Shown here piece by piece: positions 16,225 through 29,440 of a DNA stretch of 64,000 bases. How positions within the stretch are numbered: position 1 is the first letter of the stretch; each line of letters begins with the position of its first letter. The notes under the pieces are model-generated. The model was given only the letters and a program-made list of their open reading frames with translations. It searched no databases and was not told where the DNA came from. The position numbers were made by a program, and so were the translations under genes. The DNA comes from Dimorphilus gyrociliatus. Lineage: Eukaryota > Animalia > Annelida. Where the stretch lies: positions 868,001 through 932,000 of the forward strand of contig CAJFCJ010000012.1 in assembly GCA_904063045.1 (NCBI GenBank), given 5' to 3'.

Positions 16225-18152
16225 TCAGATAATTAGTTATCAATTTTTTCCCTAATCTTTGAAAGATTTTTAATAAAAAGCAACAGATTTGTAAATATTA
16301 ATAAATACAAATATGCTGCCTGTTATTTATAAAACTAAATTGTAGAGATTGTTTCTTTTCGTTGCGTTTTCCTAATAACAACCTTCCTTAAAGGGGAAAA
16401 ATACTAATTAGAGATATGAAACAGTACACTGAATCTTAATGATGGCCTATCTGTCCTTATGCTAAGTATGTATATAGTTGAGTTTACTTTGCGCATTACA
16501 GCTAGAAAGCATACATTTTGCTCGATAAATAAATCTGTTTTTGCTATATAATTTATTTCAGACTTGTGTTTCCACTATCCCTAAAATAATTCATCAATAC
16601 ATTGATGATTGTTAAAAATAATCAATATTGTAGCACCAATATTACCATTTCGATTTATAACCACGTAGGCGTTAGAGCTAACTTTTGTATAAATAGAGCT
16701 AAATCCGCTGAACATGACATTCTAATTTCAAGGCGAATAAAGAGGAAGTAAAAAACTTTTATTTTAAAACCATATTCGTTCAATGTCTTGCTTAGTTATC
16801 GTTTAGGATTTCAAATGCATACGTATAATAGTAATTATTTTTTGATCAGCAGATACAGGTGCAGTTTTATTGTTATTCTGTTCAATAGTCGCTTATTTAC
16901 TTCCTAGCACTTAAAGAGTTGCAAATATTTGGTCCATTTATACCTTTCAGTGGTCCAAATTCATGTCAAGTAAAATAAATAGTGAAATGCAGCGCAGGTA
17001 TTAATGAAAAAAGGGTTGCATCTTTTTATCTGTAAGCAGCTAGAATGAACAAATAGGCCTTCATCACTGTAATTCTCCAAAACGAGAAATTACGCCTATA
17101 CATAGAATTGTTACCGGCTATTCCTTTATCAGGTTCTATCTAAATTGTTTGCGATGGATTGTCAAACATATTATATACAGTATATAAAAGAATAAATAGG
17201 GTTGTTATATATGATTGATAGTTGAAACCCCTTAATTGGAGAGAAAAAAATTGAATTAACTCTTAAGCAAGGAATATTTTTTAATTGATTATTTCATGTT
17301 ATTAATGAGAACATTTTCAATTTTAATAAAATTTTGATGGATTATTCCATTTAAAAGCTTGTCTTATAAAATGAATTGATCCAACTCTCAACCTTTTCCA
17401 TTTTTTTTCATTATTTTTTTACGATTGCGAAAAAGCCGCTTAAATATAAAAATAAAGAGAGAAATGAAAAAAAAAAGTAAGAACAAATACAACATTAAAG
17501 TAGAATTTTTTTATTTAAAAGCTTTATTCTATCTTGATAGAAATAAGATAAATTTTCGTGTTATCAGAGATAAAAAGAACTTTCGAAGTAAAAATGCGTT
17601 AAAACACAAATAGATTATTAATTTTGAATAAAGTAGTTAGTAAACAAGTTTAAAATTTGTTTGTACAAATACAGAAGGATATAGTTTCTTTCTGAAATAT
17701 AATTCTTTATTTTCGTCTCTTTTTATAGAATATTAATAAAAATTTATTTAAAATGGAGATTTAAAAGTAATGAACACATATACAATCATTATTATAACAA
17801 CTAATTAAGCTATGCAGTTACGAAACTGCTATTGTATTAATTAACACTAATTACTGACGGATTTTTCCTTGGTACGTAATGTCTGCTATTCTTAGAAGAG
17901 AAAGAATAAAACATTATCCTGTTAGAGACAAGTTTTATTAATATAATGAGAAATTTGTAATTAATATTAATATAATCATTAATATGTAGGATATTTAAAG
18001 AAAAATTCATGTTATTTTTGCAATATCTTATTCTGTAAAATTATTTCTCATCGCATTCGAATAAAGTCTGAAAGGGGATTTCCAAAATATTCCTAGTTTT
18101 CTTTTCTATTCAGAATTACACTGTATGTCAGATCAACACTGGCTTGAAAATA

Positions 18153-18947
18153 ATGACAAAAATGAGCGGAAATGATAAGAAAGATGTCCAGTTTTGTAAT
18201 AATGGTTCTCATCCTATACTTGCTTCAAGAGATGGAAGTTTATCTGTGAAGAGAAAAGCAGACAATGGTGATAAGATAGAAGCAAGATGCGATTTTCTAA
18301 CTAGTCGAAGTTCAACAGGAGAGACAGTATTGCATAAAGCAGTTAGAATGAATAATTTGTGTTATGCAAAAAAGCTACTATCAATGTATTCTACCCAGTT
18401 GGTAAACATTTTCAACTACAATAGGGAAACGCCCTTACATATCTCAGTAAAGCTTCTTAAAGAAGAAATGACTACTTTGCTTATTAGATATAATGCAAAT
18501 GTGAATGCAATGGATCTTAAGGGAAGAACACCTTTTACTCTTTGCTTTCTGTTGGGTAGCAGGGAAATGTTTCGTTTGTTTCTAAACAGTGGAAAAAAAA
18601 TATCATTTGACATAACTGATTTTGATGGAAATCCACCATTACATCTGGCGTTTGTGAATGATCATAAGGAACTTGTACTAGACATTCTCCAATCAACAAG
18701 GGAATTTAATTTAAATGATTATAATAGAAAGTGTGGAAGTACTATTGTTCACTTAGTAGCAGAGTCAAATGATTCCTCTTTTATGAATAAATTGATCAGG
18801 TCGAATCCACAAATCAATATAAATATGCGGAACTTTGCTGGATATACTCCATGCGAGGTTGCAAAAGGGCGAAATTTTTCTAAAATGGCTGATTTATTAG
18901 GTAAGTACACAGCACTGGAAACTGTAGTGGATAATGACTCTGAATAG
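18153..18947 (+). CDS. Intronless six-ankyrin-repeat protein, IkB/cactus-like layout
   Basis: Six ankyrin repeats (GETVLH, RETPLH, GRTPFT, GNPPLH, CGSTIVH, GYTPCE) and short acidic tail ETVVDNDSE; first ATG at 18153. Confidence 0.85.
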   Translation: MTKMSGNDKKDVQFCNNGSHPILASRDGSLSVKRKADNGDKIEARCDFLTSRSSTGETVLHKAVRMNNLCYAKKLLSMYSTQLVNIFNYNRETPLHISVKLLKEEMTTLLIRYNANVNAMDLKGRTPFTLCFLLGSREMFRLFLNSGKKISFDITDFDGNPPLHLAFVNDHKELVLDILQSTREFNLNDYNRKCGSTIVHLVAESNDSSFMNKLIRSNPQININMRNFAGYTPCEVAKGRNFSKMADLLGKYTALETVVDNDSE

Positions 18948-20474: not shown

Positions 20475-22975
20475 ATGTCTGAGAGAGATTCTAGGCACTC
20501 GATCAAAGATATTCTGGGTGAAGGAAACATGGATAGTCCGATAGAAGAGACTGGTTTGGAGGCTACAGAGGATGTTGGTGACGATGAGATTTCTAAAAGG
20601 AAGAAGAGACGTAATCGAACTACTTTTACAAGTTTTCAATTGGAAGAGATGGAACGAATTTTTCAAAAGACACATTATCCTGACGTTTACGCACGAGAAC
20701 AACTCGCTAGCAGGTGTAATCTTACTGAAGCAAGAGTTCAGGTAGGCCAAATGAAAACTTCAATGTTAAATTCCTGAAATTTGTAGTTCGTTTTTTTACT
20801 AACTTTGTAAAAAAAGATTTGTTCATCGATTACTTACAACCTAGTTAATATTAATTGGTCTTACTGAACCGAACTTCCTTATATTTGGTTTTCGAGAGTC
20901 GAAGGTCAGTGAAGGAAAACACCCTATCGCATAAACATTACATTATACGTTTTGTAGATTGGAGAGGTGGCGTAACCAATTGAAATGAGGCATAAATCTA
21001 TTAAACTATACACATAGGTCTACAATTCAACAGTAATTTACGTATGAGCATATGTATTTTTATTCTGAAATCGGTATACAGCTGTGGATTTTACACTTAG
21101 ACTAACGTAACGTCTTATCAGCATTTGCACATATGTTCACCAAACACGCTGTGCGGACTGGTCGGTCTTTGCTGACAGATAAAAGATGCTCTTATCACAT
21201 AATGAGATTATAGAAGATATTGCAAGTCGAGTGAATCCAATTTAAGAAAAATTCTTACCGTAATGTGTTTGTACGATAATCATAAGGTCATTTGTGATTA
21301 CGTAATCCCGTAAGAAACTCCCGTAATGATGAGGGATAAATGGCTTATTATATTCTAATTTAGATTCTGATTCCATATTTAGTTACCCTTAAGAATTTAT
21401 TAATTTTCGTTTCATTTCAATTAAAAGAAAAGCATATTACTGTGGCTAATTTATGCAGTTTTTTCATTAGTACGATATTTTGTATGCATCCCCAGTAGTT
21501 CTGCGATAAGCAAGAAACACTAAGTAGAAACGTTTAAGATACCATCAACAAAATATAAGGATGATTATTTTAAACAATATACTAAATAAGCCCTTGAAAA
21601 CATGACCAATTATGTAGATGACATGTTTGTTTTAGCGTTTCGGATTTCGTAGCATCTGTTTATTTTAGTACAAGCAGCATCTCTAATTCCTGCTCGGTTC
21701 GCTTCTTTATTTATGTTTAATTGACTGATAATTACCTTCTACACCTGCCTTTTATTACGTATTCGCTGCGTGCTTACTTGAGAATAAACACGTGGCAAAC
21801 TGACGAATCGTAAAAAAGCCTAACTAAACCTGACAATGTTTGTTCAAAACCTATAAAATAAAGATGTACGTAAAGTCTTCAACAAAGAGTTTAAATAGAA
21901 TCAATCCAAGTATTTCTAGTTTTCTTATTAACCAATAAATATGAAAGAATTATTTGAAAGGATGGTCAATTTATTAGACCATATGCATTGCTACAATTCT
22001 CAAATGCGTGCATACTGTCAGATTTAATCTCATCTCAACTTCCTGATCTTTGTTAATTGAATTAAGATGGTTAGTTTGGCATACTGCCATTGTTTAGAAA
22101 AGGGTTCTCTATTGGCTTTCGTATGCTTTCTATATGGAGAATTTCTCACGTGATTCTATTATATAAAAAAGAAACGTCTATAAATTGTTTACGTAAAGAA
22201 CAGTTCAAAACGAATTTTATATATTTATCTCTATCGAAAATCTATTTGAAGCAAAAGCGTTGATATTATGAATGTAAGTAGCGTCCGAAACCTCTTGACC
22301 CGGCTGCATGGCATATCAGTGTCTGCATGCCCCGGGGATCAATTCGAGTCGAGCGTCGTCTGTCTTTGGAGAAAAAATGCGTTAATTGACACTCGTTTAC
22401 AATTTAATTAACTATTTGTTTGTCATTTAAAATAGATCTCTTATCAATTAAAACAACTCCTTATCAATAAAAAACTAGAGGTGGTATAATGTCTTATTTA
22501 TATACCTTGTTATACATAGGTCTGGTTTCAAAATAGAAGAGCAAAGTGGAGAAAAAGAGAACGATTTTCTCAGATTCAGGTTAGTATAATTTAGAGTATT
22601 TGAACATTTATTTCTTTAAATGGTGCTAATAAATTAAATAATTTAAAGGTTATGAGAAATATGGCAGCCGCAGCCGCTGCTGCAGTAGCCTCGGCACCAT
22701 CATACCCAGATATGACGGCTCAATCGACCCCCTGGTTAAGTTCTAGTTCCAATATAGATACCCAGGCTCCATTTATTGCCGGTCTGCAGCATAGTAATCC
22801 GCTACAACATAATGCTGTTGCTCTACAACATCATTTTCTGGCAGAGGAGAACGAAAGGTCGTCGAATTCTCTTGCAGCATTGAGGATGAAAGCACGAGAG
22901 CATTCTACTCAACACATAGTCTCGCCAGCTCATTTAAAATACCACCTGTGGCACCCGAATAAGCTACAAGTTTAA
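20475..22975 (+). CDS. Alx: Aristaless-related paired-class (Q50) homeobox protein, Alx family; exons 20475-20741, 22520-22579, 22649-22975
   Basis: HSIKDILG octapeptide/eh1; [36 protein letters not shown]...EARVQ|[16 protein letters not shown] matches Alx1/4-type homeodomains; OAR motif [16 protein letters not shown]. Confidence 0.9.
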
Positions 22976-23820
22976 AATATTTTGTAGATATACCAAGAAT
23001 TTGCTTCTAAAGGAGAAGCTATGAAATTAAGTAAGAATTATTATTAAGCATAATATAGCAGCTTTTCTGAATTATATAAATGTGTCACATATATATATAT
23101 ATATATAAATATTACATAAGACTTTTCTTATTTCATTACGGTATATAAAAACTTGGATATTGATTTTTTTGGAGTTTTTTTCGAATAAAACAATAATGTA
23201 TACTAATGTAAATACTTGTACATGACTTTAGTAAATGTGTTACCCGGAAATGGTTATATCAATTCAATAAAGAAAGAAAATTTGCTATTTCCATACGGAA
23301 CGTCATGATAGCATTTTACCGTGGATAGGCTAAGGAAAATAAAGAAAATATAAAAAAGACAAGCTGTTAAGTGCAGAACATCGACAATCTGCCGAACATA
23401 TGCCCGGCATGCCGCCGAGCGTGTACACTATTTATTCAGTTGCTTGTCTTTCTTGCTTACCGACCGATCCCTATGGGATGTCGCGCTCTTTTATCTCCTA
23501 TTTAAAACATGCCAAATTATCCGACCGTCTGATGGGAACCATCTATAAACAATTTATAGTTTTCTTTCTAAATCTTTCTCAAGAGTACCGATGGTGATCA
23601 ATATCCATTTTAAAATTTCCGCGCAATTTATTACCAGTTTTTATCATATCAGAACTTAAGGTCACGGACAATAGGCGAATCTAAACTTGCCTGAATCAGG
23701 CCTGTGATATAAAATAAGAAGTGACGTAAGCGATCAATAATATTGCATATTAAGCTCAAAGTATATATAAGCGAGTGAACGAGCAGTACAGCAGTAGACA
23801 TTCGAACAGCTCTTGTGAAT

Positions 23821-25859
23821 ATGTCAAATCATCAATATCTAGAGATAGAGGCTCGTAAATCGAGCTCCTTCTCTCCTAAAAAGCCAAGATTTTGGCAAAT
23901 ACAATTACACGATTGTGATGAAAAGTGCACAGTTACAAAAGGTTAAAACATATTAAATGAATTGCGATTTTTAACTTATCGATGTCTTCTTAATTCTATG
24001 TTATAGCTGGATTAATCGGTTATCCGGGAAGAACGTTTCCAACAAGACGTCATAAAAGTCACAGATCAGCACTCAAGTTCATAGAATCTTGCGTTTCTCG
24101 TCAAACAAGTCGTGGTTATGTTAAAAAAATCAGAAAAGCTATTAAATCTCATGAAAATAATAAAAAACAAACACTAAAGAGAGGAAGGCCATCAAAGAAA
24201 ATCACTGCTCCTGGAATAAATTCTAGGAAAGCAAAAACATCTGATAAAAATGAAGCAATTAAAAGATCAAGATCTCCTAAAAAAGTAAAAGTTGCTGACA
24301 CCGTCGCCAAGGCAACCCCTTCAAGGAAGAGAAAGGCGAATAGAAGTTTAAGCAACTCAAGAAATAAGAAAGTAGTTAGAGTCACTAGCCAACCAACTAA
24401 ACCTACGAAGAAAAATAGAAAACAGACAAATGCAGCTTCACCGAGATCAATACTGAAAAAGAAAGATACTCCACCGAAATTATCGAAGCAAGATACTCTT
24501 GATATTGACTCTGCATTAGAAGCAAAGGAAACGATGACAAAAAATAAAATAGTGCAGAGAATAGCAACACTTACAAAAACAGATTCTAAACCTTTCATTG
24601 CCAAAAGTCCTTCAATTCCTCAAAATATGGAAGCTCATACTTTATTAGAAATTCCATTGCCTGGTGGTCAATATAGTTCAGGTTTTGGATTGCATATTGA
24701 TGAGGATCGTATTCTATTTGGTGATGAAGAGGGAAGTATTATAGAACTTGATCATAGAGGAAATGTTATAAAAAGAAGTAAATTGGATCAAGGTGTCAGA
24801 TGTATTGTAAGAGATGGTGGTTTCGTTTATGCCGGAGGAAATGATGGAGGTTTATATGATTTGACAAATGGTCCACCGCGTTTAATGTGCAAAATAGAGG
24901 ACTTCGGAAAAGTCTATAGTTTAGATGTTAAACACGGAATTATTGCGGCCAGTGATGAAAACGGTTATGTTGCATTAGTTAATTATGAAGGAGAAATAAT
25001 GTGGAAAAAAATGGAATCAACTGACGGATGGATGGTTATTATGGACGATAATTTTATATATCATGGAACCATTGGTGCAGTCTCTAAAATGGAAAAGATG
25101 ACCGGAGACGAAATATGGAAGCAAGAAGGCCTATCTCCCGTAAACTACGGCGTAAAGAGGGAAGACAAAGTTTTGGTAGCGGCAGTTAATAGAGTAGTTC
25201 AAGTTGACACCGAAACTGGAAAGATACTCAATGAATATAAAGATAAAGGTGCCGATACCATCTATTGCTGTGACAAGGGAGATGGTCTTGTATTTGCAGG
25301 AAGCGATGATTGTGTTCTTGTATATGAGGAAGAAAGCGAAAAGTTACTGTACAATTTAAAGGTGAAGCACCGACCTTATTCCATCAAATACTATGGAGGT
25401 CGTCTCTATCTTATTGGAAAAGCAATGTTTACGATATTGAGTTTAACTAAGGAATCTATAGAGAGTATGTTAGAAAAAAGAGGCAAAAATAAATTTTCCT
25501 CAAAAAGAATTGAAAACATATTGAAAAATGTACCCCTTGTTGCTCCCCTTACTCGTGTTGAATCCATAAACACAGTCAAGGCCAAGGGTGGTATTATGCT
25601 GGAGTGCGTAAAAGATGGTGAAAAGTTACGGGTCAAACCAATTGGTCCATCATTTGAACGTAAGTTATCATTTATAGAAATTAATTTTATCAATTAATCA
25701 AACTAAATATATCCTATCAAAACAGCCGATTGGTACGTTATGTTTCCACAAAGCTTACGTGTAGAGGGAGCAAAATATATCGTTGATAAGCTTGAAGTTG
25801 CTGGCGAATCATCCCGTTTCTACCGAACAGTTGGAAGAATTCAAATGATTGAAGATTAA
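23821..25859 (+). CDS. WGR domain + basic H1-like linker + PQQ/WD-like beta-propeller + bacterial-type C-terminal domain, 635 aa; exons 23821-23941, 24007-25659, 25726-25859
   Basis: Three exons sum to 1908 nt in frame; WGR-like YLEIE...RFWQIQL...VTKAGLIGYPG...ALKFIE...SRGY; K/R-rich linker with KRGRPSK; propeller repeats; C-terminus LECVKDGEKLRVK...EPDWYVMFPQSLRVEGAKYIVD...FYRTVGRI; TATA-like gtatatataag at 23761. Confidence 0.85.
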
Positions 25860-26129
25860 CCACAAAAATCCTCAAAAATCTATTAGTCACTAATAAAGAG
25901 AAAACAGGATAAAAGTTAAAATTACTATAATCACGTGATATTGACAATGTAATTTACTGTATATAAGATATTTATTTTTTTCTTAAGATAAATATATACA
26001 AAGCAAAAGATTCAATCTCTTATTGTTAAAATATATAAAATCAATGTGAAACAACACTAATTCAAACAAAAGGGAATAAAAATAAAGAGTGAGAGATAAC
26101 AGAAGGATTAATTTGAAAAATAAACAATT

Positions 26130-27253: not shown

Positions 27254-29440
27254 ATGTTTTATGCACATTTCGTATTAAGCAAAAAAGGGCCACTAGCCAA
27301 AGTTTGGTTAGCGGCCCATTGGGATAAGAAATTAACTAAAGCTCATGTTTTTGAAACGAATATCAACAACAGTGTTCAAGCTATCTTACAACCAAAGGTA
27401 TGTTGAAATATTTTTATTTACGACATACCAACAATATGGGATCATTAATTTTTTTCAGGTTAAAATGGCTTTACGTACATCAGGACACTTGCTTCTTGGT
27501 GTAGTAAGAATATACTCAAGAAAAGCAAAATATTTACTAGCTGATTGCAATGAAGCTTTTGTTAAAATTAAAATGGCCTTCCGTCCTGGAATGGTTGATC
27601 TACCCAGTGGACAACAGCAAGCCTCTGTTGCAGCAATTACTCTTCCAGAAACTTTTCATGATTTTGAATCCACTATGGCAGATTTAGCGTAAGTTATTCG
27701 AAAGTTTAAAAAGGAAAGTATTTTTAATGGGCCACATATTCATTCCTTTAGCGATTTCGACGTCCAAGCCCAACTTTCAGTTAATCAAAGTAAACCCGAA
27801 GATATTACAATGAAAGAAGATTTAGGGACGATCTCATTTAACGAATTTGGAGGAGGTGATATGGAATTTGATGACAGTCAAATGTTACGAGAAGATTTCG
27901 ATGAAAATTTCCTGCAACCCTATTCATCTGATGCCGACAAAATGGATATAGGTGGAGCAGGTGCTGATGATGATCTAGGGCAATATATTGGTAATTAAAG
28001 GAATTTCTCTCATATCTCGGATATATATTATGTCATTTTATGATTTTCTAGGTGATGATGACCCATGTCCAGCTGACGACTTGTCATCAGACGATGATAA
28101 CAACGACGATCTTGGTAATATAGAACACGCAGATTTAATTGGAGCAGATGGCAGTGGTTTTATGACCCACGAAACTGGCAACATTTTTGAAGATCCTGCG
28201 CCACCCTCTGAGCCTCCAAAAGATTTTGACATGACTACCGGTGCACCGAAAGACACAACTGTTAATCAACCAAACGTAACGGCAATGACAGACAGAAGTG
28301 CTGTCCCTGATCAAACTACCCTTGTTACAAATGATAGAGAAGCGTTTGCTTTAGAGCCGTTAGATGTCACGAGTGTCCATGGTTAGTAAAGTTTATAATT
28401 TTGTTTTTCAATTATTATAACTTTTCGATTTAGGTGGAGTTGAAAGGCGAACAAAGAGAAAACGACGTCTAATCGTTGATGAACAAAAAGGAATCTCATC
28501 TGAAACCATGAAACTACAACTCTCCGATACCGGGGATATTTCTACATCTCTTGATTTGGCTCCTCCAACAAAACGCCTTATGTTATGGAAAGAAACTGGG
28601 GGTGTTGAAAAATTGTTTGCCTTGTCGGCTGATCCAATTTGTTCAAAAACTATAAATCAAGTAATTGCTATTTAAAGTTTAATTATTTAATTTAATAATT
28701 TAAAACTATTTCTTTACAGCATTTTATCAACAGTATGGTCACCAGAGCAATTGGTGATGATGACGATGATATTCGCAACGAATTACAAGTTCCAGGTGGT
28801 TTTGGAGACATAGAAACAGCTAGAAATAGAGCCTCAGTCCGTTCATCAGTCAACGACAGGAGTTTAGCAGATGTGGAAAGAGTCAGACATGATTCCTCAG
28901 TTTTGTCGGTTCCAAATATTGATCAAGATTCAACCCTTCAAAGATCAAGAGAAGACGAATCTTTGGCACATATTTCAGATTTGCCTCTGATAAACGACAC
29001 ATTACCTCCCGACGTTGATATTAACCCAGCTAGTGTGGGTACAGTGGAAGATATATTTGATATGGCTTTGGACAGCGTTGCTCCACCAAGTGTTGGTGGA
29101 GATTCAATAGGTGGAGAAGAAAATGAAGAGGAACAAGAAGAAAGACGTTGGGGCAAGAGAACACATCAGTTAATTCGAATGATTGATTCTAAAATGGATT
29201 ACTCCGAAAAGTTATCGTTTAGTTCATTGCTGCTAAAGAACAATAGAAAACAGGTTAGTTTTTTTGATATTTTATAAAAGCAAATCATTAAATGTATCTT
29301 CTATTTTAAAGGTGGCTTCAAAATTCTACACTCTATTGGTTCTAAAGAAGAATCAAGCTATAAATATTGAACAGGATACACCTTTTGGTGAATTAATAAT
29401 ATCCAGAGGACAAAATTTCCAATCTTGCATGACAGCTTAA
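27254..29440 (+). CDS. RAD21: Cohesin kleisin subunit RAD21 (multi-exon)
   Basis: [35 protein letters not shown]; [43 protein letters not shown]; [10 protein letters not shown]; C-terminal [18 protein letters not shown]...[10 protein letters not shown]. Confidence 0.97.

What the first reader, a model, noticed from the sequence alone, without database searches (positions are those of the whole stretch)
23821..25859. Bacterial-type WGR/PQQ-propeller gene domesticated in an animal genome, with an added histone-H1-like linker
Seen: 635-aa spliced ORF (two GT-AG introns, host-like AT content) between Alx and RAD21, so not contamination. The order WGR - propeller - C-terminal 'ECV..G.KLRV...W.V.FP..LR.EGA.Y.VD...FYR..G.I' matches, from memory, WGR-domain proteins of actinobacteria, cyanobacteria and myxobacteria, often annotated 'molybdenum metabolism regulator'. 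This copy has a ~140-aa K/R-rich linker with an AT-hook-like KRGRPSK. Inference: horizontal acquisition (or patchy ancient retention) repurposed as a chromatin or nucleic-acid/PAR-binding protein.
Basis: partly seen in the sequence, partly recalled or inferred. Interest (0 to 1): 0.75.

Follow-up and report, generated by a model that had tools for sequence, protein, structure and literature searches.

The report
Annelid WGR-propeller chromatin-type gene
A small marine worm carries a real, spliced and conserved gene of a rare family otherwise known from bacteria. Its nearest relatives turn out to be other eukaryotic copies tied to DNA-binding domains, so a direct bacterium-to-worm transfer is unlikely.

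Summary
Window 23821-25859 (+) is a three-exon, 635-aa gene, identical to the public Dimorphilus gyrociliatus protein DgyrCDS8746. It is single-copy and lies between a paired-type homeobox gene and RAD21. Intron 2 is spliced in metatranscriptome contigs. A related worm has a syntenic orthologue under purifying selection.

The domain order is:
- a degenerate WGR-fold domain;
- a 153-aa basic linker (net charge +36, AT-hook KRGRPSK, two SPKK);
- a seven-bladed PQQ-type propeller;
- a 67-aa beta-barrel with no Pfam or PDB relative.

The origin story is only partly supported. The family also occurs in eukaryotes, where the same core follows BRCT, SAP or linker-histone domains. The worm gene sits in a eukaryote-type clade (support 97/98). 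A multi-exon homologue exists in another animal genome. Forcing the worm gene to group with bacteria is worse but not formally rejected (p-AU 0.085).

Basic tails recur family-wide, in bacteria too. Three of twelve bacterial loci lie in type XIII retron loci.

Best reading: a DNA- or chromatin-tethered scaffold of an old, patchy eukaryotic subfamily. Its function is inferred, not shown.

The parts
23762..23770 (+). TATA-like box (TATATATAA), 51-59 nt upstream of the ATG
   Evidence: Read from the sequence only; not tested.
23821..23941 (+). Exon 1 (codons 1-40 plus the first base of codon 41): N-terminal half of the WGR-like domain
   Evidence: 76% aa identity to sister-species exon L002:2514-2636. 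dN/dS 0.03.
23942..24006 (+). Intron 1 (65 nt, GT..AG, phase 1), inside the WGR-like domain
   Evidence: The same position holds a 61-nt GT..AG intron in the sister species. No RNA contig covers it.
24007..25659 (+). Exon 2 (1653 nt): rest of the WGR-like domain, the basic linker, the propeller, and the start of the C-terminal domain
   Evidence: RNA contigs of runs X1 and X2 lie on 24072-24393, 24780-25270 and 25458-25659.
23821..24131 (+). WGR-fold domain (residues 1-82, interrupted by intron 1); the signature Y/W-G-R reads A-G-L
   Evidence: The Atlas model of residues 1-82 matches ten of ten WGR-bearing clusters, TM 0.65-0.72. The Pfam WGR model does not hit at E<=1. hhalign against the family's own WGR gives 5% probability, though it aligns end to end.
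24132..24590 (+). Basic linker (residues 83-235): 33 K + 14 R, net charge +36, pI 11.5, SPKK at residue 130
   Evidence: dN/dS 0.42, so the sequence is relaxed while the composition is kept. The motif PPKLSKQDTL is shared with the K-rich exon of locus L012.
24177..24197 (+). AT-hook-like KRGRPSK (residues 98-104)
   Evidence: Kept as KRGRPTR in the sister species. A similar SRGRPS sits in the MMETSP member P0156.
24591..25565 (+). Seven-bladed PQQ-type beta-propeller (residues 236-560)
   Evidence: Pfam PQQ_2 29-29.7 bits against a cutoff of 27.6. AlphaFold2 model pLDDT 91, pTM 0.89, 29 strands. Foldseek gives E 6e-17 to propellers. dN/dS 0.05.
25566..25856 (+). C-terminal 67-aa five-stranded beta-barrel ('C-dom', residues about 567-635), interrupted by intron 2
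   Evidence: Family HMM 86.5 bits. No Pfam family and no PDB sequence relative. Model pLDDT 87. Weak OB-like fold matches, best Z 5.3. TM 0.87 to the bacterial family in the Atlas.
25660..25725 (+). Intron 2 (66 nt, GT..AG, phase 1)
   Evidence: Removed exactly in contigs of two metatranscriptome runs. A homologous phase-1 intron is present in the sister species.
25726..25859 (+). Exon 3 (end of C-dom, stop codon at 25857-25859)
   Evidence: The sister species encodes a near-identical exon.
25892..25897 (+). AATAAA, 33 nt after the stop codon
   Evidence: Read from the sequence only.
20475..22975 (+). Upstream neighbour: paired-type homeobox gene with OAR motif (Alx/Arx-like)
   Evidence: Pfam Homeodomain 1e-15 and OAR 2.6e-6. 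Same neighbour in the sister species.
27345..29277 (+). Downstream neighbour: RAD21
   Evidence: Pfam Rad21_Rec8_N 1.2e-20. Same neighbour in the sister species.

Best explanation
This is an expressed, selectively maintained annelid gene for a modular nuclear-type protein. A conserved two-domain core (seven-bladed propeller plus a small OB-like beta-barrel) is delivered to DNA or chromatin by its N-terminal parts: a degenerate WGR-fold domain and a strongly basic linker with an AT-hook. Shown: the gene, its splicing at intron 2, synteny, constraint, the domains, and the homology. Inferred: nuclear location, DNA or chromatin binding, and the propeller as the recognition platform for a partner or ligand. 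In origin it belongs to a eukaryotic subfamily (clade E1) of a family shared with bacteria. It has been in animals since before this worm's lineage split from at least one other animal lineage. The link to bacteria is therefore old and indirect, not a recent bacterium-to-worm transfer.
For: Gene reality.
Conserved orthologue: the sister species has the same two intron positions and the same neighbours, OAR-homeobox / gene / RAD21 / BTB-Kelch.
Constraint: dN/dS is 0.03-0.07 for the WGR-like part, 0.05 for the propeller, 0.14 for C-dom and 0.42 for the linker.
Homology of the core: 298 clusters at E<=1e-3 and 33 at E<=1e-30.
The core repeatedly follows DNA or chromatin modules:
- WGR in bacteria and in P0010.
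- BRCT+SAP in P0004.
- Two BRCT in Stenamoeba P0030.
- A linker-histone domain in P0038.
- K/A/P-rich tails in bacterial P0023, P0043 and P0036.
Phylogeny: the worm pair is sister to P0003+P0006 (97/92), inside an 11-row clade with P0004 and P0010 (97/98). All recognised bacterial rows lie on the other side.
Other animal: L012/L013 carry at least 8 exons over 12 kb on 0.37- and 1.68-Mb contigs, nearest to P0003 and then to the worm. They have a K-rich exon sharing PP.L.KQDTL. The same assembly, linked by an identical repeat ORF on four contigs, has a dynamin-binding-protein gene whose only named relatives are Capitella and Biomphalaria.
Nucleic-acid theme in bacteria: three of twelve loci sit inside type XIII retron loci. 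Deinococcus and E. coli WGR proteins are reported as DNA-damage induced (PMC8533742).
Against: - No localisation or binding data exist. The function rests on domain association alone.
- The WGR signature residues are lost (A-G-L where the family has Y-G-R), and the Pfam WGR model does not hit.
- C-dom matches OB folds only weakly: Z at most 5.3, and no Foldseek hit at E<=1e-3.
- The AU test does not formally reject placing the worm pair with bacteria (delta lnL 24.5, p 0.085). The worm branch is long (1.07).
- Most E1 members come from unnamed sequencing runs. Their eukaryotic nature is inferred from domains, introns and neighbours.
- No RAD21 or homeobox synteny was seen around the other animal's copy within the DNA available.
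Confidence: 0.6

Rival explanations
1. Direct horizontal transfer from a bacterium into the dinophilid lineage, followed by intron gain and addition of the basic linker.
For: The WGR-propeller-C-dom order is the typical bacterial architecture. The family is missing from every named animal protein seen other than DgyrCDS8746. The AU test does not reject grouping with bacteria at 0.05.
Against: The best tree puts the gene in a clade without recognised bacteria (97/98). Its nearest relatives carry eukaryotic features such as BRCT+SAP and introns. A homologue in another animal genome shares a linker motif. One E1 member (P0010) already has WGR, so the architecture need not come straight from bacteria.
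Confidence: 0.1
2. Eukaryote-to-animal transfer: a protist copy of the E1 subfamily entered an ancestor of some spiralians, rather than vertical descent with many losses.
For: The distribution is very patchy. In the sampled tree there are three separate eukaryotic clades among bacterial rows. The family is rare even in bacteria: 0 of 400 other Bacteroidota genomes and 6 of 400 other Actinomycetota genomes. No synteny was seen between the two animal copies.
Against: It cannot be told apart from ancient retention with the present labels. The animal-like copies group together: P0003, then the worm, are the best matches of L012 and L014. That needs only one entry into animals either way.
Confidence: 0.25
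3. The protein is not chromatin-related. It would be a cytoplasmic or RNA-binding scaffold whose basic linker is simply a disordered spacer or a nucleolar or RNA tether.
For: The fold neighbours of C-dom are mostly RNA-binding OB domains such as RNase R, Rho and IF1. Propellers are generic interaction platforms. The WGR signature is degenerate.
Against: The AT-hook is kept between the two species. Relatives carry BRCT, SAP and linker-histone domains in the same position.
Confidence: 0.2
4. Assembly contamination or a dead insertion.
For: None was found.
Against: The gene lies on a 2.86-Mb scaffold between animal genes, with spliceosomal introns and host-like GC. It is syntenic in a second species, shows dN much lower than dS, and has spliced RNA.
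Confidence: 0.01

Closest known systems
Bacterial 'WGR domain-containing protein' with a PQQ_2/BamB-like propeller, about 475-500 aa (for example the Sphingobacteriales MAG protein P0008, and Emticicia agri L022:4995-6437)
   Same: Same order of WGR, linker, seven-bladed propeller and 67-aa C-terminal barrel. The core is 28-33% identical, E 1e-44 to 1e-51. C-dom has TM 0.87 and rmsd 0.9.
   Different: The worm copy has introns, a three-times longer and far more basic linker with an AT-hook, and a WGR without the Y/W-G-R signature. It groups with eukaryotic copies, not with these proteins. None of this family has been characterised experimentally, as far as the library searches showed.
Eukaryotic members of the same core family: BRCT+SAP-core (P0004), 2xBRCT-core (Stenamoeba stenopodia P0030/P0040), linker-histone-core (P0038; MMETSP P0156), WGR-core (P0010)
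   Same: The same propeller plus C-dom core sits behind an N-terminal DNA, chromatin or damage-response module and a low-complexity basic or acidic spacer. P0004 and P0010 are in the same clade as the worm gene.
   Different: The targeting module differs. In the worm it is a WGR fold plus an AT-hook, with no BRCT, SAP or H15 domain.
PARP1-3 WGR domain
   Same: The predicted fold of residues 1-82 matches WGR domains, including PARP-linked ones. The domain is associated with DNA-related partners.
   Different: There is no PARP catalytic domain. The Pfam model is not matched, and the Trp and Arg of the signature are replaced.
Histone H1 C-terminal tail and HMGA AT-hook proteins
   Same: Lysine-rich, with SPKK motifs and an R-G-R-P core flanked by basic residues.
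   Different: There is no H15 globular domain in the worm protein. The resemblance is compositional only.
Type XIII retron accessory proteins (WGR-like + HEAT/ARM; SWIM protein), Mestre et al. 2020, PMC7736814
   Same: Bacterial cousins of the worm gene lie next to these genes and to RT_XIII in L022, L021 and L024. They share a WGR domain.
   Different: The propeller gene is not listed among type XIII components in that paper's main text. Nine of twelve bacterial loci lack the retron. The worm genome copy has no such neighbours, and PADLOC finds nothing in P0001.

Membership tests
WGR domain (Pfam PF05406) | Match to the Pfam model above its gathering score (22 bits) | tested here: not met
   No WGR hit at E<=1 for P0001 or for the separate exons. 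Relatives P0010 (51.7 bits) and P0024 (61.1 bits) do match.
WGR domain (Pfam PF05406) | WGR fold | tested here: met
   The Atlas model of residues 1-82 has TM 0.65-0.72 to ten of ten clusters that carry WGR. This is a predicted model compared with predicted models.
WGR domain (Pfam PF05406) | Signature Trp/Tyr-Gly-Arg | tested here: not met
   The profile alignment places A-G-L (in AGLIGYPG) opposite Y-G-R (in YGRIGTDG). hhalign probability is only 5%. AGLIGYPG is identical in the sister species.
PQQ-type (BamB-like) beta-propeller, Pfam PQQ_2 | Match above the gathering score, and a propeller fold | tested here: met
   29.0-29.7 bits against 27.6. The profile matches PQQ-propeller and BamB chains in the PDB at 1e-14 to 1e-20, behind designer propellers at down to 9e-33. 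The model has seven four-stranded blades, pLDDT 91. Foldseek gives E 6e-17. No PQQ cofactor binding is implied.
WGR-propeller-C-dom family (bacteria and eukaryotes) | Co-linear propeller plus the 67-aa C-terminal barrel with F-P...R..G...Y.V...FYR..G.I | tested here: met
   Full-length core alignments to 30+ members. The C-dom HMM scores 86.5 bits, E 9e-27. The invariant F, P, V, Y and G are kept.
AT-hook | R-G-R-P core flanked by basic residues | tested here: met
   KRGRPSK at residues 98-104, kept as KRGRPTR in the sister species. DNA binding was not tested.
Linker histone H1/H5 | H15 winged-helix globular domain (PF00538) | tested here: not met
   No hit in P0001. The relative P0038 does have it. 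Only tail-like composition and two SPKK motifs are present.
Bacterium-to-animal horizontal transfer | The recipient gene nests inside a bacterial donor clade | tested here: not met
   The gene lies in clade E1 without recognised bacterial rows, support 97/98. The constrained alternative is 24.5 lnL worse, p-AU 0.085, so it is not formally excluded.
Bacterium-to-animal horizontal transfer | Absence from other animals | tested here: not met
   Multi-exon homologues lie on Mb-scale contigs of an assembly that also holds an animal dynamin-binding-protein gene. Further intron-split copies are L014, L015 and L045. The organisms are unnamed, so the breadth across animals is unknown.
Bacterium-to-animal horizontal transfer | Integration in the host genome (not contamination) | tested here: met
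Type XIII retron system | Adjacent RT_XIII, SWIM_XIII and WGR-HEAT genes | tested here: not met
   This applies to some bacterial cousins only. The worm gene has animal neighbours and no PADLOC hit.

The most novel reading that the evidence does not exclude
The propeller plus C-dom core is an undescribed, ancient module that reads an unusual nucleic-acid or chromatin state. In bacteria it is recruited by WGR or basic tails, and sometimes serves type XIII retrons. In eukaryotes it was captured into the DNA-damage and chromatin toolkit behind BRCT, SAP, linker-histone or WGR domains. A few animals (dinophilid annelids and at least one other, probably spiralian, animal) kept it beside RAD21-type genome-maintenance functions.
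Probability: 0.3. Interest if true: 0.75.

Novelty: new variant of a known kind. Interest (0 to 1): 0.55.

Why it matters
If the reading holds, this defines an uncharacterised family of chromatin or DNA-damage proteins. The family has a new small domain and spans bacteria, protists and a few animals. It also gives a compact, tractable animal (73.8-Mb genome, PMC7854359) in which to study it.

It corrects a tempting 'bacterial gene in an animal' story. The bacterial look comes from a shared old architecture, and the immediate kin are eukaryotic.

The link of bacterial cousins to type XIII retrons offers a testable hint about what the core recognises.

Tried and rejected
- The word-index protein search found only the worm protein and its sister. 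With the core alignment it found only four family members, so it gave no names.
I redid it through genome handles.
- Paper searches for the run and assembly accessions gave nothing useful.
- Run X7 (85% of words held) laid no contig, a filter effect according to the tool.
- No RAD21, homeobox or other window neighbour was found around L012/L019, L013-L016, L001 or L004.
- No WGR exon could be found upstream of the other eukaryotic copies by tblastn or HMM.
- C-dom has no Pfam family (seven members weakly touch Pab87_oct, E at least 0.01) and no PDB sequence relative.
- Fold searches gave only weak OB-like rows.
- The propeller matches only generic propellers.
- PADLOC finds nothing in the worm protein.
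- The retron linkage is not general: none in six Actinomycetota loci, Actinoplanes, Anaeromyxobacter or Aureispira.
- The AU test was not decisive.
- Complex prediction was not used because no specific partner is claimed.
Full report
**Organism and gene model**

Exon 2, translated by reference, matches at 100% the 635-aa NCBI/UniRef protein DgyrCDS8746 of the annelid Dimorphilus gyrociliatus. That protein sits on a 2.86-Mb scaffold.

Reading the sequence and the ORF list gives this model:
- exon 1 at 23821-23941;
- a 65-nt GT..AG intron;
- exon 2 at 24007-25659;
- a 66-nt GT..AG intron;
- exon 3 at 25726-25859.

The exons were searched separately by reference. For full-length work I used the database record P0001, which a tool returned.

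The neighbours are a homeobox gene with an OAR motif upstream and RAD21 downstream. The gene is single-copy in the 77.9-Mb assembly.

**Expression and conservation**

Two marine metatranscriptome runs of one study hold contigs 95-99% alike. These lie on exon 2 and join 25659 to 25726, so intron 2 is spliced out in RNA of a very close strain. Intron 1 has no RNA cover.

A second species at 70% protein identity (Logan runs SRR23372228 and SRR23372229) has the gene between the same neighbours: OAR-homeobox, gene, RAD21, BTB-BACK-Kelch. It has exon 1, both introns at the same places and phase, the AT-hook and exon 3.

Synonymous sites are saturated, while dN stays low. The dN/dS values are:

| Region | dN/dS |
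|---|---|
| Exon 1 | 0.03 |
| Rest of the WGR-like part | 0.07 |
| Propeller | 0.05 |
| C-terminal domain (exon 2 part) | 0.14 |
| Linker | 0.42 |

This is a working gene, not contamination and not a relic.

**Domains**

- *Pfam.* Only PQQ_2 is seen, at 29 bits against a cutoff of 27.6.
- *Residues 1-82.* The Pfam WGR model is not matched. hhalign against the family's own WGR gives 5% probability, although it aligns end to end and puts AGLIGYPG opposite YGRIGTDG. The ESM Atlas model of residues 1-82 matches WGR-bearing clusters in all ten rows, TM 0.65-0.72. I call it a degenerate WGR fold that has lost the signature Trp/Tyr and Arg.
- *Residues 83-235.* This stretch is 31% K+R, net +36, pI 11.5. 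It holds KRGRPSK at 98-104 and an SPKK at residue 130; a second SPKK lies at residue 18, in the WGR-like part.
- *Residues 236-635.* With a 32-row alignment this part folds with pLDDT 91 and pTM 0.89, into seven four-stranded blades plus a small barrel. The propeller resembles only generic propellers.
- *The last 67 residues.* They form a five-stranded barrel (pLDDT 87). It has no Pfam family and no PDB sequence relative. Fold matches are weak and OB-like, with best Z 5.3 to the cold-shock domain of RNase R, which is below the tool's own trust level. By shape it recurs in the bacterial family (TM 0.87), in phage MoxR-type ATPases, in giant-virus RING proteins and in HNH proteins.

**The family**

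An exhaustive phmmer search found 298 clusters at E<=1e-3 and 33 at E<=1e-30.

Examples are P0005 from a Myxococcales MAG and P0008 from a Sphingobacteriales MAG. P0008 has relatives in Emticicia, Actinoplanes, Anaeromyxobacter, Aureispira and an alphaproteobacterial MAG. The Atlas clusters are mostly Actinomycetota and Cyanobacteriota.

The family is rare. In samples of 400 other genomes per phylum it was found in 0 of Bacteroidota and in 6 of Actinomycetota.

There are also many eukaryotic members:
- two Stenamoeba stenopodia transcripts with BRCT domains before the core;
- an MMETSP transcript and relatives with a linker-histone domain;
- a protein with BRCT+SAP;
- versions with a VWA insert.

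One member sits on a contig with Pex19, PPR and sulfite-oxidase-type neighbours.

Bacterial members without WGR often carry K/A/P-rich histone-like tails at either end. The basic or DNA-binding front end is therefore a family habit, not an annelid invention.

**Phylogeny**

I built a careful IQ-TREE tree (LG+C20+F+G4 by PMSF) from 58 core sequences aligned to the family HMM.

The worm pair is sister to P0003+P0006 (ultrafast bootstrap 97, SH-aLRT 92). It lies inside an 11-row clade (97/98) with P0004 (BRCT+SAP), P0010/P0022 (WGR), P0007/P0021 and P0059/P0143. Every recognised bacterial row lies on the other side. Two further eukaryotic clades sit among the bacterial rows.

Forcing the worm pair to group with ten bacterial rows against that clade costs 24.5 log-likelihood units, p-AU 0.085. 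That is disfavoured, not excluded. The worm branch is long and the bootstrap had not fully settled.

**Other animals**

Short hits of 54-77 aa proved to be exons.
- In ENA assembly ERZ24900295, contigs of 0.37 and 1.68 Mb (GC 0.29-0.33) carry at least eight exons of a homologue over 12 kb.
- Its best matches are P0003 and then the worm protein.
- It has a K-rich exon containing PPSLAKQDTL, against the worm's PPKLSKQDTL.
- An identical repeat ORF links this contig to three others of the same assembly. One of them carries a dynamin-binding-protein-like gene whose only named relatives are Capitella teleta and Biomphalaria glabrata.

The organism is thus an animal, probably a spiralian.

More intron-split copies lie in ERZ26693581 and ERZ23495076, and in GCA_013332895.1. 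GCA_014466255.1 has a tandem pair nearest to P0010. None of these organisms could be named here. No shared synteny was visible in the DNA available.

**Function**

Nothing has been tested experimentally. The inference runs as follows.
- The same core is repeatedly placed behind modules that bind DNA, nucleosomes or damage-response phosphoproteins: WGR, BRCT, SAP, H15, AT-hooks and basic tails.
- The worm protein has a conserved AT-hook in a +36 linker.
- The small barrel is OB-like.

I therefore read the protein as a DNA- or chromatin-tethered scaffold whose propeller recognises a partner or ligand.

In bacteria, three of twelve loci examined put the gene inside type XIII retron loci:
- Emticicia agri: WGR-HEAT, this gene, SWIM, RT;
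- a Sphingobacteriales MAG: this gene next to the RT;
- an alphaproteobacterial MAG: this gene, WGR-HEAT, SWIM.

The other nine loci lack the retron.

Mestre et al. 2020 list RT, a SWIM protein and a WGR-HEAT protein for this retron type, and no propeller gene in the main text (PMC7736814). A Deinococcus study notes that a WGR protein is induced in the radiation response, and that E. coli MolR was described as part of the LexA regulon (PMC8533742).

These are leads pointing to nucleic-acid-centred roles. They are not proof for the worm protein.

**Verdict**

The architecture match to bacteria is confirmed. The WGR is confirmed at fold level only.

The origin claim is weakened. The gene belongs to a eukaryotic subfamily and is shared with at least one other animal. 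Old, patchy retention, or an older transfer between eukaryotes, fits better than a direct bacterial donation.

The genome paper reports no horizontal-transfer analysis of this gene (PMC7854359). I found no paper on the family.

Noticed in passing
L022:1753-9881; L021:3956-8334; L024:337-5605: Bacterial WGR-propeller-C-dom genes lie inside or beside type XIII retron loci (RT_XIII, SWIM_XIII, WGR/HEAT_XIII by PADLOC) in Emticicia agri, a Sphingobacteriales MAG and an alphaproteobacterial MAG. The retron classification paper does not list a propeller gene for this type in its main text.
   Followed up: partly
P0053, P0076, P0083, P0103 (proteins): The 67-aa C-terminal barrel also occurs as a tandem pair after VWA domains. 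By shape it also occurs at the end of phage MoxR-type AAA ATPases, giant-virus RING proteins and an HNH nuclease family. It behaves as a mobile, unnamed domain.
   Followed up: partly
L014:3604-4344; proteins P0093 and P0046: The N-terminal tails of some eukaryotic members carry RRSxR[LI] motifs. From my own knowledge these resemble the HMGN nucleosome-binding core. The worm protein lacks them.
   Followed up: no
P0007 and P0115: An unidentified insert of about 150 aa, with the pattern VSLMWN..DDLDL...CGG.LDVDMN, sits inside the propeller of two eukaryote-like members.
   Followed up: no
L016:1338-6251 (GCA_014466255.1): Two tandem copies of the family lie in one 8-kb contig. The second copy has one intron.
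   Followed up: partly
L012, L017-L020 (ERZ24900295): A 94-aa ORF of a repeat element recurs, in identical or near-identical copies, several times per 20 kb on four contigs. The introns are full of (TA)n runs.
   Followed up: no
window 18144-18947 (+): A single-exon 267-aa ankyrin-repeat ORF lies upstream of the homeobox gene.
   Followed up: no
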